From positions 1,488,001-1,552,000 of the forward strand of contig JANHCV010000001.1 of the NCBI GenBank assembly GCA_025594325.1: a stretch of DNA of 64,000 nt. Direction: 5' to 3'. Source of the DNA: Blastocladiella emersonii ATCC 22665. Lineage: Eukaryota; Fungi; Blastocladiomycota. The notes under the pieces were generated by a model. The model was not told the DNA's origin and did no database searches. It saw only the letters and a program-made list of their open reading frames with translations. Below, piece by piece: positions 1 to 55,043 of the stretch (within the stretch, counting starts at the first letter, position 1; each line of letters starts with the position of its first letter). The position numbers and the translations under genes were made by a program.

Positions 1-148
1 CCCGCCGCATTCGATTCCGCGACAGAGTACCGGCGCGCAGCACGAATTTACTCAACCGCCGCCGCGTATCCCGACAGAGACGCAGGGCGCGCACGTTGCG
101 CGAGCCGTCTCCGCTTGGTCTTCTCAGCGGGCGGGCGCCGCTCCTTTT

Positions 149-51662: not shown

Positions 51663-54600
51663 ATGGCGTCGTCGACTGCGCCACTCGGCGCGGCGGGCCC
51701 GCGGCGTCGCCGGCTCCGTGACGCGTCGCACAGCATCCTCCTCGCCCTCGCCACGGTCGCGCTGCTGCTGCCGTGGATGGCCGAGGCGCTCAAGGTTCGG
51801 CTCATTGCCGACACCGATCGTGCGTCTCGATTGGGTCTGTCGCCGTTGCCGTGACGCCCGCTCACTCGGTTTCGTATGTAGTGACGGCGCCGTTCACGGC
51901 GCAGGCGATGCGCGGGTGCACCAACGTCGCGAGCAGCAACTCGGCCGTCTCGTGCAACTTCTCGCGCGTGTCGGGATCGCTCTCCAACGCCGACCTCTAC
52001 GCCGCGTGGGAGAACCTGGTCATCAACTGTACGTTGCCCGCGCGAGCGCATCGCCGGACTGCGACTGACCCCCGCTCGCTTTAGCCGGCGACGACGTGTA
52101 CATTGGGAGTTACTTCGGGTTCGTTTCTACGATGGATCAGCTTGCCGCCAAGTACCCCGCGAAGCTCTTTGTGGCCCTCGACTCGGCCATGTCGCCGCCC
52201 AAGGACAACACCATGGGCGTCACCTTCGCCGAGGACCAGGCCGGCTACCTCGCGGGGGCGCTCGCCGGTGTTTTCAGCACGTCGAAGCGCGTCGGTGTCA
52301 TTGGCGGTCTCCCGATCCCGTACGTCTCACTCGTGTGCTCGGACCACCGACTGGGGCACTCACACCCTGTACGTGTAGGCCCGTCAAGAAGTTTGTCAAC
52401 GGCTACCTCGCCGGTGTCCTGTCGGTATGCCCGACGTGCGAGGTGTACTCGACGTACCGTCCGAGCTTCGACAACTCGACGGTCGGCCAGCTCGCGGCGC
52501 GGTCGCTGATCGCGCAGGGCGCCGACGTCATCTTCGGCGCGGGCGGCGGGATGGGTAGCGCGGGGATCCTAGAGGCGGCGCGCAACCGCGTCTTCGCGAT
52601 CGGCGTCGACTCGAACGAGGCGCTGACGACCTTCAAGGACCGGGCCGAGATCGACTACCTGCTGTCAACGGCCGAGAAGAAGGTGGACGTGGCCATCTCG
52701 AGCGCCATCACGTCGATCCTGGCGGGCAAGCGCGGCGGGTTCAACATGGTGCTCGACACGAGTCTCGGCGGCGTGGCTCTCGTGTCGCCGTTCAACTCGA
52801 CGACGCTGCACGATTTCTCCGTGCCCGTCACCGTGTCGATCAAGAACGCGTACGACACGTGCGCGACCACGTCCTTCTCGCCGCGCTCGACGATCCTCAC
52901 GCTCATCTTCAACTCGCTAAAGAGCAAGCTGACGTTCACGTCCGTGGTTCCCGCATCCGGCGACCTACAACCGCTCACGACCTTCGCCAACAAGACATTC
53001 TACGACATGGCGCCGTTCGGCCAGCGCAGCAGCATGCCCGCGGGCACGCAGGGGCTCGGCGCGGCCATGGTCGGCGGCAACCGGATCCTGGCGTGGGGCG
53101 GGCAGACCAAGTTCGGCGAGTACCCGACGGCCATGATGGCGCTCGACTTTGACAGCTTCACGTGGACGCAGGTCGCCGACGCGAGCTCGGTCAAGCCGGC
53201 GGGCCGCGCGTTCCACGCGCTCGGCTACGACGCGGCGGGCGGCAACATCTGGATCTACGGCGGGCAGTCGGCGTCGAGCGTGCTGGGCGACACGTGGAAG
53301 TACTCGGTGGCCGCGGCAACGTGGACGGCCGTCACGACCTCAGCATCGCCAGGAACGCGGACCAACTTTGCGCACGCGACGCTCGACCAGACAATGTACG
53401 TGTACGGCGGCGTGACGCCGACGGGCGAGATCCAGCGCGACCTGTGGGCGCTCGACATGGCCGCGGGCGCGTGGTCGCCGGTCGCGGCCAAGGGCGCCGT
53501 GGTGCCGCCCGCGCTGCAGCACGCGGCGCTCGTGGCCGTCAACGGGACGCAGCTGGTGCTTTACGGCGGGACCAACGAGCAGGGGTCCGTGACCAACTCG
53601 CTGTACGTGCTGGACGTGCCGAGCAAGACGTGGCGCGTCGAGCAGCCGAGCACGCTCAAGACGGGTGCGCCGCCGGCGGCTGAGCGGATGCGCGCCGTGT
53701 ACCTCGACCAGCGCCGCGTCCTGTTCACGGGCGGTCTGGGCACGTCGGGCCCGCTCAACGCGACGTGGGTGTGGAAGATGGACGAGGGCGAGTGGTCCAA
53801 CAACGCGTACGGGTCGCTGCCCGCGGCGCTGCACAGCCACGCGCTCGTCACCTTCAACCAGAGCGCGTACGCCAAGGCGTGCCAGTACGCAGAAATCCCC
53901 GTGCTCTCGCTGTGCACGCCCGCGACCGTCAACGCCGTGGTCGCCGTCAGCGGCGTCACCAACAGCCCCGGCGGCGGCGTGGTCGTGTCGTTTGCGAACC
54001 CGGACCCGCCGCCGCCGCCGGTCGGCGTGATTGACGCGGGCGCCAAGTGGGCCGTCACGGTGCTCAACGCGGTCGGCCTGATGCTCACGCTTGCGCTGTC
54101 GACGTTCCTGTGGCTCAAGCGCGGGCACAAGGTGATCAAGGCCAGCAACGTGAGGTTCGCGGCGCTCATCCTGCTAGGCACGCTGCTCGCGCACATTGGC
54201 CTGATCGCGAGCTCGTGGGTCCCCGACGCGCGCACGGCCATCATGCTCACGGCGTTCCTGGTCGGGTCCGGCTACACATTGGTCTTCAGCGCGCTCGTTG
54301 TCAAGACGTACCTCATTTACGGCATTTTCTCCTCGAAGCGCGCCGTCAAGCGCAAGATGCCCAAGTACTTTGCCGCGGTCGTGTTCGCGCTCGGCATCCA
54401 GCTGCTCCTGGTCGGCCTGTGGTTCCAGTTCGACAGCAACGCCATCATCTCGATCAACGTGGCGGGCACCGTGTGGAACATCCGTTCGCTCGACTCGAAC
54501 TGGGTGCTGCTCTCGTCGCTGCCCGTGATCCTGCTCACCATCGCCGGCGTCTTCCTCAGCTTCAAGACCCGCCACATCGCCAGCAGCTTCAACGAGTCGT

Positions 54601-55043
54601 ACTACATTGGGATCGCGACGTACTCGATCGCGCTCGCGCTCATCGTCGTGGCGCCCGTGATCCTGCTCCTCCAGGCGCCGCTCGTCCAGTACATCATCTC
54701 GGCGATCCTGGTCACGCTCACGACGATCGGCGTCCAGCTCATCTTCTTCGGCCACAAGGTGTCGGCGGTCTTCATGCCCGCTAACATCGCCGAGGTCGAC
54801 AACTCGACGGCCAGCGAGTCGTCGGCGGGCGAGAGCTCGACGGGCGTGCTCCGGTGCAAGTACTGCAAGCAGGCGCTGCAGGCGGGCAGTGCGGCGGGCG
54901 GGAACAGCACGATCGCCACGGGTATGGGCATGGGTACGCTGCAGGGCAAGATGGGGTCGGTCAACAACATGGGCACGCTGCAGGGCAAGGGCGGGTCCGC
55001 GTCGCCGTCCGCGCGGCCATCTCTCAAGCAGGCGTTGATGTGA
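51663..55043 (+). CDS. Class C (GABA-B/Grl-like) GPCR: signal peptide, Bmp/PnrA domain, Kelch propeller, 7TM
   Basis: Four exons. Bmp motifs VTFAEDQAGYLAG, GVIGG.P.P.V..F..GY..G, GADVIFGAGG and AIGVDSN. Five or six Kelch blades (GG...W). 7tm_3 motifs VIKASN, GYTLVFSALVVKTYLIYGIF and KTRHIASSFNES. Confidence 0.88.

What the first reader, a model, noticed from the sequence alone, without database searches (positions are those of the whole stretch)
51663..55043. Class C GPCR with a Kelch beta-propeller between a Bmp/PnrA sensor and the 7TM domain
Seen: signal peptide; Bmp-family periplasmic-binding fold (~51830-52790); five or six Kelch blades (~53060-53850, e.g. IWIYGG...W, MYVYGG...W, LVLYGG...W); 7tm_3 domain (~54040-54760). 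Known: Bmp/PnrA/TmpC proteins are bacterial purine-nucleoside-binding ABC components, Bmp + 7tm_3 receptors occur among Dictyostelium Grl proteins, and Dikarya largely lack class C GPCRs. I do not know a described receptor with a Kelch propeller in place of the cysteine-rich linker. Inference: a two-input receptor (small nucleoside-like ligand plus protein or glycan surface), plausibly for zoospore chemotaxis or settlement.
Basis: partly seen in the sequence, partly recalled or inferred. Interest (0 to 1): 0.8.

Follow-up and report, generated by a model that had tools for sequence, protein, structure and literature searches.

The report
Fungal GPCR with Bmp-Kelch sensor
This water-mould-like fungus has an intact gene for a seven-helix membrane receptor whose outside part joins a bacterial-type nucleoside-binding clamshell to a six-bladed propeller; I found no paper describing this sensor pair, which also occurs in other swimming-spore fungi, in single-celled relatives of animals and in an amoeba.

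Summary
Window 51663-55043 (+) is a four-exon gene of Blastocladiella emersonii (identical to NCBI H9P43_000555, 1067 aa). It encodes a signal peptide, a Bmp/PnrA clamshell, a six-bladed Kelch propeller, a 12-residue proline stalk and a class C (7tm_3) seven-helix domain. The distal Bmp half, the Kelch and the 7TM lie in one 887-codon exon. AlphaFold gives a confident model (pLDDT 87.6, pTM 0.74).

The architecture is not unique to this gene. The same layout occurs in Allomyces, Catenaria, Sorochytrium, at least seven chytrid species and the holozoan Corallochytrium. The Bmp-Kelch pair alone sits on receptor kinases and receptor guanylyl cyclases in Pigoraptor and Chromosphaera, and on a single-pass protein in Amoeba proteus.

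The Bmp nucleoside-pocket residues are conserved across the family. The Kelch keeps only its fold residues plus one membrane-side Cys pair. This favours one conserved small-ligand input with the propeller as a rigid relay in place of the cysteine-rich domain, not a conserved second binding site.

Krishnan et al. 2012 listed the Allomyces orthologues as BMP-type Glutamate receptors without mentioning Kelch. I found no paper describing the Kelch. The scan had already noted the 81%-identical paralogue on another piece of this genome (s1-248138). No RNA evidence was obtainable.

The parts
51663..55043 (+). Whole coding region (start codon to stop codon) of the receptor gene, 1067 aa
   Evidence: Spliced translation has no stops and equals NCBI H9P43_000555
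51663..51819 (+). Exon 1 (residues 1-52 plus 1 nt); followed by intron 1 at 51820-51881
   Evidence: GTGCGT donor and TAG acceptor; frame joins to give ...IADTD|LTAPF
51882..52028 (+). Exon 2; followed by intron 2 at 52029-52084
   Evidence: GTACGT donor and TAG acceptor
52085..52319 (+). Exon 3; followed by intron 3 at 52320-52378
   Evidence: GTACGT donor and TAG acceptor
52379..55043 (+). Exon 4: distal Bmp half, linker, Kelch, stalk, 7TM and tail in one open frame
   Evidence: ORF 52335-55043; Pfam Bmp, Kelch and 7tm_3 all within it
51663..51788 (+). Signal peptide / N-terminal hydrophobic helix (residues 1-42)
   Evidence: RRRR n-region and helix 22-38 in the model; hydrophobic window 21-39
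51792..52925 (+). Bmp/PnrA-type periplasmic-binding (Venus-flytrap-like) domain, residues about 44-362, interrupted by the three introns. Pocket residues F57, D134, F185, F210, V256, D257, K280.
   Evidence: Pfam Bmp; phmmer to PnrA, Lbp, TmpC, BmpD and BmpA; Foldseek TMt 0.75-0.81 to nucleoside-bound SBPs; pocket conservation
52926..52982 (+). Bmp-to-Kelch linker (residues 363-381), conserved and confidently modelled
   Evidence: pLDDT 89-94 over residues 361-400; aligned in a single HMMER stretch across family members
52983..54005 (+). Six-bladed Kelch beta-propeller (residues 382-722). Blade 6 is closed by the N-terminal strand 388-390.
   Evidence: 24 strands in six groups of four; VIA Z 38.6, rmsd 2.0 A over 302 residues to the LZTR1 Kelch domain, model range 382-720; Pfam PF24681 and PF24981
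53859..53930 (+). Family-specific insertion in blade 6 (residues 674-697, QSAYAKACQYAEIPVLSLCTPATV) with the conserved pair C681/C692, on the face where the chain leaves for the membrane
   Evidence: Translation; C681 36/38 and C692 37/40 conserved; Q674, C681 and C692 are the only non-canonical conserved Kelch positions
54000..54035 (+). Proline stalk PDPPPPPVGVID between the last propeller strand and TM1
   Evidence: Translation; the Kelch end lies about 12-15 residues before the TM helix in GPCR, kinase and cyclase members alike
54036..54773 (+). Class C 7TM domain (residues 733-978). K822 (K3.50), R911, N918-E919 and K973 are conserved. There is no TM3 Cys, and H972 stands in place of the Pro of the TM7 PK motif.
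   Evidence: Pfam 7tm_3; phmmer E 1.5e-11 to mGlu7 and 1.9e-11 to GABA-B2 with alignments; seven helices in the model; column counts
54849..54872 (+). Conserved cytoplasmic tail motif LRCKYCKQ (CxxC) inside an otherwise disordered tail (54774-55040)
   Evidence: Translation; C1006 17/19 and C1009 22/23 conserved across family members that reach this region; tail pLDDT below 50

Best explanation
Shown. The gene encodes a class C (Glutamate-family) G-protein-coupled receptor of a zoosporic fungus. Its ectodomain is a conserved two-domain cassette: a Bmp/PnrA-type clamshell followed, through a short well-ordered linker, by a six-bladed Kelch propeller. The propeller sits directly on the seven-helix bundle through a 12-residue proline stalk. 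It therefore occupies the place that the cysteine-rich domain has in mGlu, CaSR and taste receptors. The same cassette sits on single-pass receptor kinases and receptor guanylyl cyclases in unicellular holozoans.

Inferred. A small ligand with a planar ring and a ribose-like diol (a nucleoside or a similar heterocycle) binds in the Bmp cleft, between the aromatic pair F57/F210 and the polar set D134, D257 and K280. Cleft closure is passed on by the rigid Bmp-Kelch unit, probably within a dimer, to the 7TM bundle. The bundle keeps the class C TM3-Lys/TM6-Glu lock and so probably activates a heterotrimeric G protein. On this reading the propeller is mainly a rigid relay, spacer or dimer platform rather than a conserved second ligand site.
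For: Gene and domains.

Structure: full-length AF2 model with pLDDT 87.6 and pTM 0.74, and linker pLDDT about 90. The Kelch matches the LZTR1 and KLHDC2 six-bladed propellers at Z 37-38.6. The Bmp part matches nucleoside-bound Lbp, PnrA and BmpD at TMt 0.75-0.81.

Pocket: PMC13325309 gives the conserved nucleoside pocket of Bmp-family binding proteins as Phe27, Asp98, Phe151, Phe176, Val224, Asp225 and Lys242 (BmpA numbering). These map onto F57, D134, F185, F210, V256, D257 and K280. The alignment ranges give near-constant offsets for this mapping: about 7 to BmpA 9q1u and about 34-36 to BmpD 6shu. Those positions are 79-100% conserved, counting aromatic for aromatic, over 33 non-redundant cassette sequences, against a domain mean of 0.49.

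Kelch conservation: only fold residues plus Q674/C681/C692 are conserved, and top-face loops are no more conserved than bottom loops.

Cassette: colinear single-stretch HMMER alignments over Bmp+Kelch, with Pfam and source names. These cover GPCRs in Blastocladiomycota, Chytridiomycota and Corallochytrium; kinase plus guanylate cyclase in Pigoraptor P0029 and Chromosphaera P0044; kinase in P0050 and P0053; and Amoeba proteus P0074. The juxtamembrane geometry is the same in all of them.

7TM: K822, R911, N918-E919 and K973 are conserved and align to the mGlu7 KT..IF and FKTR..FNE motifs.
Against: No ligand was tested and no coordinates were available. The pocket mapping therefore rests on sequence spacing and alignment ranges, not on superposition.

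Bmp-family proteins also bind other ligands. The same PDB hit list includes an atrazine-binding AtzT and TpN38(b). The base-specifying N-terminal loop (D50, T58) is variable here.

This protein lacks the TM3 Cys of the class C TM3-ECL2 disulfide, which chytrid members keep (12/29). It also has His where Pro stands in the TM7 PK motif. Coupling could therefore be atypical.

Lack of family-wide conservation on the Kelch top face does not exclude lineage-specific partners.

Dimerisation and G-protein coupling are assumed by analogy with class C receptors. No transcript evidence could be obtained.
Confidence: 0.55

Rival explanations
1. Two-input receptor. The Bmp cleft binds a small molecule, and the Kelch top face independently binds a protein or glycan such as a surface cue. 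The receptor integrates a soluble and a contact signal, much as Dictyostelium fAR1 senses both folate and LPS.
For: The long B-C and D-A loops lie on one face, as in ligand-binding Kelch propellers such as Keap1, KLHDC2 and LZTR1. Weak sub-threshold similarity exists to the sugar-handling Kelch protein NanM/YjhT: PF24996 at 28-43 bits against a cutoff of 45 in relatives, and 2uvk at Z 30.5. A class C receptor with two ligand types has a precedent (PMC5969738).
Against: No non-structural residue on the top face is conserved across 31 non-redundant members. In fAR1 both ligands bind the VFT itself. The NanM similarity is no better than to any other Kelch.
Confidence: 0.25
2. The architecture is the same, but the Bmp domain senses a non-nucleoside ligand such as riboflavin, a folate- or pterin-like compound, a free base or a sugar derivative.
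For: Solved relatives in the hit list include atrazine-binding AtzT and TpN38(b) alongside the nucleoside binders. The N-terminal specificity loop is variable in the family. The first ~90 residues of the domain (P0001:44-140) have no detectable PDB relative on their own.
Against: All seven positions of the conserved nucleoside pocket carry the canonical residue in this protein. The best sequence matches to the Bmp part and the best structural matches to it are nucleoside-bound proteins.
Confidence: 0.3
3. The receptor works only as a heterodimer of the two B. emersonii paralogues with a GABA-B-like division of labour, or it is a non-signalling or decaying copy.
For: Two paralogues at about 81% identity exist. 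GABA-B-like traits are present: no cysteine-rich domain, and no Trp at the mGlu TM6 position. Both paralogues carry the P-to-H change in the TM7 PK motif.
Against: Both paralogues keep the Bmp pocket, the TM3 Lys and the TM6 FNE motif, and both have intact reading frames. Nothing suggests asymmetry. The strong conservation across phyla argues against decay.
Confidence: 0.1
4. Annotation artefact: two or three neighbouring genes read as one.
For: No RNA reads were available. One relative (P0033, 2932 aa) does look like a fused gene model.
Against: The distal Bmp half, Kelch and 7TM share one uninterrupted 887-codon exon. The same order is seen in more than 20 proteins from more than 12 species.
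Confidence: 0.02

Closest known systems
Allomyces macrogynus AMAG_08984 / AMAG_12053, listed as Glutamate-family GPCRs with a BMP N-terminal domain (Krishnan et al. 2012, PMC3251606)
   Same: These are true orthologues: 48-50% identity over 94-96% of the exon-4 query (P0004, P0006). Precomputed Pfam shows the same Bmp+Kelch+7tm_3 content.
   Different: The paper names only the BMP domain. Kelch does not occur in its text, so the propeller and the cassette were not described there.
Dictyostelium Grl receptors (Bmp + 7tm_3; 13 of 17 per Krishnan 2012). fAR1 is a characterised Dictyostelium class C chemoattractant receptor (PMC5969738).
   Same: A class C 7TM with a bacterial-type binding-protein ectodomain and no cysteine-rich domain. 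The nearest ESM-Atlas cluster is an Evosea Bmp+7tm_3 family (score 0.77, a lead only). fAR1 shows that such receptors can drive chemotaxis to a heterocyclic ligand.
   Different: Grl proteins are about 700 aa and no Kelch is listed for their cluster; here about 340 residues of propeller are interposed. I did not test whether fAR1's VFT is of the Bmp type.
Bacterial and archaeal Bmp/PnrA/TmpC/BmpD/BmpA/Lbp nucleoside-binding proteins of ABC importers
   Same: Same fold (TMt 0.75-0.81), clear sequence similarity (E 1e-20 to 1e-10) and a conserved aromatic cradle with Asp/Asp/Lys pocket.
   Different: Here it is a domain of a eukaryotic receptor with no lipoprotein anchor or ABC partner. It carries extra Cys pairs (C65/C77; C197-x-x-C200) and an N-terminal lobe too divergent to find PDB relatives alone.
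Metazoan class C GPCRs (mGlu, CaSR, T1R) and GABA-B
   Same: 7tm_3 domain with TM3 Lys, the FKTR..FNE motif in ICL3/TM6 and the TM7 Lys. A clamshell ectodomain is joined to the 7TM through a rigid intermediate module.
   Different: The clamshell is Bmp rather than ANF_receptor. The intermediate module is a Kelch propeller rather than the nine-cysteine domain. There is no TM3-ECL2 disulfide in the Blastocladiomycota members, and no Trp at the mGlu TM6 position.
Natriuretic-peptide-type receptor guanylyl cyclases and Venus kinase receptors (one clamshell type used with GPCR, cyclase and kinase outputs)
   Same: The Bmp-Kelch cassette is likewise found with a 7TM, with kinase plus guanylate cyclase (P0029, P0044) and with kinase alone (P0050, P0053).
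   Different: The sensing unit is a different two-domain cassette. The parallel rests on my own knowledge of those families plus the Pfam results here. It was not tested functionally.
Extracellular Kelch propellers of the attractin/LZTR1 type (PF24981)
   Same: A six-bladed Kelch matching PF24981 at 97 bits (cutoff 50) and the LZTR1 Kelch at Z 38.6, placed outside the cell next to a membrane anchor.
   Different: No CUB, EGF, PSI or lectin neighbours. Here it is fused between a binding protein and a GPCR.

Membership tests
Class C / Glutamate-family GPCR (Pfam 7tm_3) | 7tm_3 profile match above the curated threshold, with seven helices | tested here: met
   PF00003 at 104.8 bits against a cutoff of 33.5, residues 555-793 of exon 4. 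Seven helices at 733-978 in the model. phmmer E 1.5e-11 to mGlu7 and 1.9e-11 to GABA-B2.
Class C / Glutamate-family GPCR (Pfam 7tm_3) | Conserved TM3 Lys and TM6 Glu (ionic lock), FKTR..FNE motif and TM7 PK motif | tested here: met
   K822 26/28, R911 22/24, N918 22/25, E919 22/24 and K973 18/20, aligned to mGlu7 motifs. Exception: P972 is His in both B. emersonii paralogues.
Class C / Glutamate-family GPCR (Pfam 7tm_3) | Large extracellular clamshell (periplasmic-binding-protein fold) as the orthosteric ligand site | tested here: met
   The clamshell is Bmp-type, not ANF_receptor. Ligand binding itself was not tested.
Class C / Glutamate-family GPCR (Pfam 7tm_3) | Nine-cysteine domain (NCD3G) between clamshell and 7TM (absent also in GABA-B) | tested here: not met
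   No PF07562 hit at E<=1. A Kelch propeller and proline stalk occupy that position.
Class C / Glutamate-family GPCR (Pfam 7tm_3) | TM3-ECL2 disulfide | tested here: not met
   Position 801 is Ile here and I/V/L in Blastocladiomycota, but Cys in 12/29 family members, mostly chytrids. There is no Cys between residues 692 and 1006.
Class C / Glutamate-family GPCR (Pfam 7tm_3) | Obligate dimer and G-protein activation | not testable with these tools
   No multimer prediction or assay was available. C341 is a conserved (33/36) seventh ectodomain Cys with no evident partner and could form an inter-chain bond; this is inference.
Bmp/PnrA family of substrate-binding proteins (PF02608) | Profile match and fold | tested here: met
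   61.5 bits for the exon-4 part alone (cutoff 24.1) and 80-132 bits in full-length relatives. Foldseek TMt 0.75-0.81 to 7x0r, 6y9u and 6shu.
Bmp/PnrA family of substrate-binding proteins (PF02608) | Aromatic sandwich plus the Asp/Asp/Lys ribose-binding set | tested here: inconclusive
   F57, D134, F185, F210, V256, D257 and K280 fit the BmpA set by spacing and by the alignment ranges, and they are conserved. No structural superposition or binding data were available.
Bmp/PnrA family of substrate-binding proteins (PF02608) | Free or lipid-anchored partner of an ABC importer | tested here: not met
   It is an internal domain of a eukaryotic 7TM protein.
Dictyostelium Grl-type receptors (Bmp directly on 7tm_3) | Bmp and 7tm_3 in one chain | tested here: met
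   the family is described.
Dictyostelium Grl-type receptors (Bmp directly on 7tm_3) | Clamshell joined to the 7TM without a further folded domain (about 700 aa in total) | tested here: not met
   A 341-residue propeller lies between them. The Atlas Evosea cluster is 704 aa with only 7tm_3 and Bmp listed.
Kelch beta-propeller | Six four-stranded blades with GG / Y / W / R-type repeat signature and ring closure | tested here: met
   Six GG doublets, and Trp in the outer strands. 24 strands, with N-terminal strand 388-390 completing blade 6. Z 38.6 to the LZTR1 Kelch.

The most novel reading that the evidence does not exclude
The Bmp-Kelch pair is an ancient modular extracellular sensor cassette of Amorphea (fungi, holozoans, amoebozoans). 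It was wired repeatedly to different outputs: a class C 7TM, an unclassified multi-pass membrane domain, receptor kinases, and receptor guanylyl cyclases. This parallels the shared use of the ANF-receptor clamshell by animal GPCRs and cyclases. In zoosporic fungi it would provide a class C receptor for extracellular nucleosides, which to my knowledge has not been described.
Probability: 0.4. Interest if true: 0.7.

Novelty: new variant of a known kind. Interest (0 to 1): 0.55.

Why it matters
Class C receptors are the textbook case of a bacterial binding protein grafted onto a seven-helix bundle. How clamshell closure is passed to the bundle is studied almost only in animal receptors, which have a cysteine-rich domain or, in GABA-B, none.

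Here a different clamshell (Bmp) and a different intermediate module (a six-bladed propeller) do the same job. The same two-domain unit is reused on kinases and cyclases in animal relatives. That gives a natural experiment on how ectodomain movements are transmitted.

It also points to a concrete, testable ligand class (nucleosides or similar heterocycles) for orphan receptors of zoosporic fungi. These are a group in which Glutamate-class (class C) GPCRs are enriched and which includes parasites of plants.

The interest is tempered in three ways. N-terminal domain variety in early-fungal class C receptors is already known. The Allomyces orthologues are already catalogued. Nothing functional is shown here.

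Tried and rejected
- RNA evidence: the look-up of sequencing runs listed no RNA run for the locus.
- First pocket mapping: I initially mapped the ribose-binding Asp and the second stacking Phe to E151/D152 and F232. I rejected this because the spacings (Phe176 to Asp225 = 49 in BmpA) and the alignment ranges fit D134, F185 and F210 instead. E151-D152 and F232 remain highly conserved, with an unassigned role.
- PDB search with the N-terminal 97 residues of the Bmp domain alone found nothing significant, so residue-level alignment to TmpC for F57 and D50 could not be printed.
- Word-index search with the 7TM region alone gave only family members, one chytrid SBP_bac-type class C receptor and insect mGluRs. 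It did not resolve where the 7TM sits among class C subfamilies.
- ESM Atlas feature search gave only a 0.77 hit, below the level that counts as evidence.
- The supplement of the B. emersonii genome paper is not held, so I could not see how H9P43_000555 was classed there.
- The cassette tree (quick method) resolves a Blastocladiomycota clade and a chytrid clade (both SH-aLRT 99), but deep nodes are open and long branches meet. It cannot decide between vertical descent and transfer, nor the order of fusions.
- Model coordinates are not exposed. The relative orientation of the Bmp cleft, the propeller faces and the bundle could not be measured, and neither could the partners of C341.
Full report
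**1. The observation**

The region 51663-55043 (+) lies in DNA of 61-72% G+C and holds a long ORF at 52335-55043. Reading the three frames upstream gives three short introns with GTGCGT/GTACGT donors and TAG acceptors.

The spliced model has exons 51663-51819, 51882-52028, 52085-52319 and 52379-55043. It is 3204 nt with no internal stop and encodes 1067 aa. The word-index search returned an identical protein, H9P43_000555 of Blastocladiella emersonii ATCC 22665, and a direct string comparison confirmed identity.

Pfam on exon 4 alone finds three things:
- the distal half of a Bmp domain (E 8.6e-17);
- a Kelch propeller (PF24681 E 1.8e-42, PF24981 E 1.2e-27, plus six single-repeat models);
- 7tm_3 (E 7.8e-30, 104.8 bits against a cutoff of 33.5).

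The flanking genes are separate: an alkyltransferase-like gene upstream, and a CoA-transferase on the minus strand downstream from 55434.

**2. Anatomy**

I built a full-length AlphaFold2 model from a 45-sequence family alignment (A2). Mean pLDDT is 87.6 and pTM is 0.74. Only residues 1-20, 984-1001 and 1014-1067 fall below pLDDT 50.

The layout along the chain is as follows.
- Signal peptide: a hydrophobic helix at 22-38.
- Bmp domain: an alternating beta/alpha fold from about 44 to 362.
- Linker: a confidently modelled stretch (pLDDT about 90).
- Propeller: 24 strands forming six four-stranded blades (residues 382-722). The N-terminal strand 388-390 completes blade 6.
- Stalk: the sequence PDPPPPPVGVID.
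- 7TM: seven helices at 733-978.

Foldseek and VIA place the propeller with the six-bladed Kelch domains of LZTR1 and KLHDC2 (Z 38.6, rmsd 2.0 A, 302 residues). They place the clamshell with nucleoside-bound Lbp, PnrA and BmpD (TMt 0.75-0.81).

By strand order, both the entry into the propeller (strand 6D) and the exit from it (strand 6C) lie on the face with the short A-B and C-D loops. That face also carries the one family-specific insertion (residues 674-697, with C681 and C692) and leads into the stalk. This short-loop face should therefore point to the membrane, and the long-loop face should point away. This is inference from topology.

**3. The family**

The word search found eight further proteins with the same three Pfam families, at 45-80% identity. 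They are a B. emersonii paralogue, three in Catenaria anguillulae, three in Allomyces macrogynus and one in A. arbusculus.

The exhaustive HMMER search added many colinear single-stretch matches. Pfam scans and source names identify them.

Bmp+Kelch+7tm_3:
- Sorochytrium milnesiophthora;
- Phlyctochytrium bullatum and P. planicorne;
- Fimicolochytrium jonesii;
- Chytriomyces confervae and C. hyalinus;
- Chytridiales sp. JEL0842, matched colinearly over Kelch and 7TM but not itself Pfam-scanned;
- the holozoan Corallochytrium limacisporum (P0054).

Blyttiomyces (P0031) matches colinearly over late Bmp, Kelch and most of the 7TM and has six C-terminal hydrophobic segments, but was not Pfam-scanned. 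Clydaea (P0105) shows Bmp and Kelch only, with no 7tm_3 and no C-terminal membrane segment.

Bmp+Kelch with other outputs:
- one TM helix, a kinase-like domain and a guanylate cyclase in Pigoraptor chileana (P0029) and Chromosphaera perkinsii (P0044);
- one TM helix and a kinase in P0050 and P0053;
- one TM helix in Amoeba proteus (P0074);
- a multi-pass membrane region with no Pfam match in P0038 and the metagenomic P0067. The neighbours of P0067 look eukaryotic.

In every type the last propeller blade carries the ..NQS..AC....C.P.. insertion and is followed within about 12-15 mostly Pro-rich residues by the first membrane helix.

A quick maximum-likelihood tree of the cassette recovers a Blastocladiomycota clade and a chytrid clade, both at SH-aLRT 99. 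It leaves the deep branches open.

The Kelch is therefore not a lineage-specific insertion into one receptor. Bmp-Kelch is a cassette.

**4. What binds where**

PMC13325309 names the pocket shared by solved Bmp-family nucleoside binders as Phe27, Asp98, Phe151, Phe176, Val224, Asp225 and Lys242 in BmpA numbering. Phe27/Phe176 form the aromatic sandwich and Asp98/Asp225/Lys242 hold the ribose. PMC7093131 gives the matching BmpD and PnrA residues.

The spacings in the fungal protein are F57-D134-F185-F210-V256/D257-K280. These fit that set. The alignment ranges give near-constant offsets: about 7 for D134, F185 and F210 against 9q1u, and about 34-36 for F210 and D257 against 6shu.

Across 33 non-redundant cassette sequences the counts are:
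- position 57 is aromatic in all but one;
- D134 is kept in 26 of 32;
- position 185 is aromatic in about 90%;
- position 210 is aromatic (F or W) in 32 of 33;
- V256 and D257 are kept in 88%;
- K280 is kept in 91%.

The mean for the domain is 0.49. The N-terminal loop positions that tune base specificity in bacteria (here D50 and T58) vary.

The propeller is different. The only positions at 80% or more are the canonical GG doublets, Trp, Pro and Arg/His of the repeat, plus Q674, C681 and C692. The long-loop face is no more conserved than the short-loop face (0.396 against 0.393).

This pattern fits one conserved small-ligand site in the Bmp cleft and a structural, relaying role for the propeller. 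It does not exclude lineage-specific partners on the propeller.

The ectodomain has seven cysteines. Two pairs are evident (C65/C77 and C197-x-x-C200), as is the pair C681/C692. C341 is conserved in 33 of 36 sequences and has no evident partner. It is a candidate for an inter-chain bond, by analogy with other class C dimers. This is inference only.

**5. The seven-helix domain**

phmmer aligns it to mGlu7, mGlu2-5 and GABA-B2 (E 1e-11 to 1e-8).

Conserved features:
- the TM3 Lys (K822, in VVKTYLIYGIF against mGlu7 LTKTYRIYRIF);
- the FKTR..FNE motif before TM6 (R911, N918, E919);
- the TM7 Lys (K973).

Three departures:
- no Cys at the top of TM3 (Ile 801), although 12 of 29 relatives, mainly chytrids, have Cys there, so the TM3-ECL2 disulfide was lost in Blastocladiomycota;
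- Leu where mGlu has the TM6 Trp, as in GABA-B2;
- His 972 instead of the Pro of the PK motif, in both B. emersonii paralogues.

The tail is disordered except for a conserved LRCKYCKQ motif.

**6. Literature**

Krishnan et al. 2012 list AMAG_08984 and AMAG_12053 as Glutamate-family receptors with a BMP domain, together with 13 Dictyostelium receptors. These are the orthologues P0004 and P0006. The paper reports no NCD3G outside Metazoa, and Kelch is not mentioned.

De Mendoza et al. 2014 note Bmp+7tm_3 as conserved across distant eukaryotes, again without Kelch in the text. The 2025 surveys of holozoan and fungal GPCRs do not mention Kelch or Bmp ectodomains. Seppala et al. 2016 show that gut-fungal class C receptors carry many unusual N-terminal domains, but not this one.

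Full-text searches for Kelch with 7tm_3, and for Kelch with GPCR and Chytridiomycota, returned no paper. The B. emersonii genome paper speaks only of GPCRs diversified by domain recombination. Supplementary figures and InterPro architecture tables could not be checked.

**7. Other points**

The paralogue locus (L001) encodes a full-length protein. tblastn finds the signal peptide, the N-terminal Bmp exons and the complete TM5. The annotated 893-aa model H9P43_005756 omits them.

The scan had already reported that paralogue (s1-248138). Its conclusion that no paper describes the ectodomain agrees with mine.

**8. Verdict**

It needs correction on three counts. The architecture is a conserved family rather than a singular receptor. 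The Kelch belongs to an older Bmp-Kelch cassette shared with receptor kinases and cyclases. The conservation pattern favours a single conserved ligand site with the propeller as relay, over a conserved second input.

Function, ligand, dimer state, coupling and expression all remain untested.

Noticed in passing
L001:3809-6954 (JANHCV010000006.1, about 1298518-1301663): The paralogue H9P43_005756 is under-annotated. The DNA encodes the signal peptide and N-terminal Bmp exons upstream of the annotated start, and also the 29 codons of TM5 that the 893-aa model skips. Its exons 1 and 2 appear fused: there is no intron at the DTD|LTAPF position.
   Followed up: partly
window 54849-54872: A cytoplasmic CxxC motif (LRCKYCKQ) about 25 residues after TM7 is conserved from Blastocladiomycota to several chytrids, inside an otherwise disordered tail. 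Its role is unknown; metal binding, palmitoylation or a partner site are possibilities.
   Followed up: partly
P0038 (Pigoraptor chileana, 1380 aa) and P0067 (JGI metagenome 3300059473, 1278 aa): Here the Bmp-Kelch cassette is followed by five to seven hydrophobic segments that match no Pfam family at E<=1e-6. This may be a fourth, unclassified membrane output for the cassette, or a very divergent 7TM.
   Followed up: no
P0033 (Phlyctochytrium planicorne, 2932 aa): This protein is annotated as 'Coiled-coil and C2 domain-containing protein 2A', but residues 1957-2917 are a complete Bmp-Kelch-7tm_3 receptor. It is probably two genes merged in the model.
   Followed up: no
P0020, P0022, P0024, P0025 (2333-4666 aa, Logan and others): These giant proteins have 9-21 separate matched stretches to the query. 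They may be tandem arrays or merged gene models. Their origin is unknown.
   Followed up: no
window 54240-54242 (residue 801) and 54753-54755 (residue 972): There are lineage-specific changes at two class C hallmark positions. The TM3 Cys is lost in all Blastocladiomycota members but kept in chytrids. The Pro of the TM7 PK motif is His in both B. emersonii paralogues, but Pro in Allomyces and Catenaria.
   Followed up: partly
P0049, P0058, P0066, P0071 (bacterial, 689-1155 aa): Bacterial proteins with two or three Bmp domains in tandem ranked high in the search, for example from Anaerolineaceae and Hyphomicrobiaceae MAGs. They are not related to the cassette beyond the Bmp fold.
   Followed up: no
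window 52113-52121 (residues 151-153) and 52533-52535 (F232): The segment FAEDQAGYLAG and F232 are among the most conserved positions of the Bmp domain (85-88%), yet they are not part of the published nucleoside-pocket set. Their role is not assigned; a hinge or a second shell of the pocket are possibilities.
   Followed up: no
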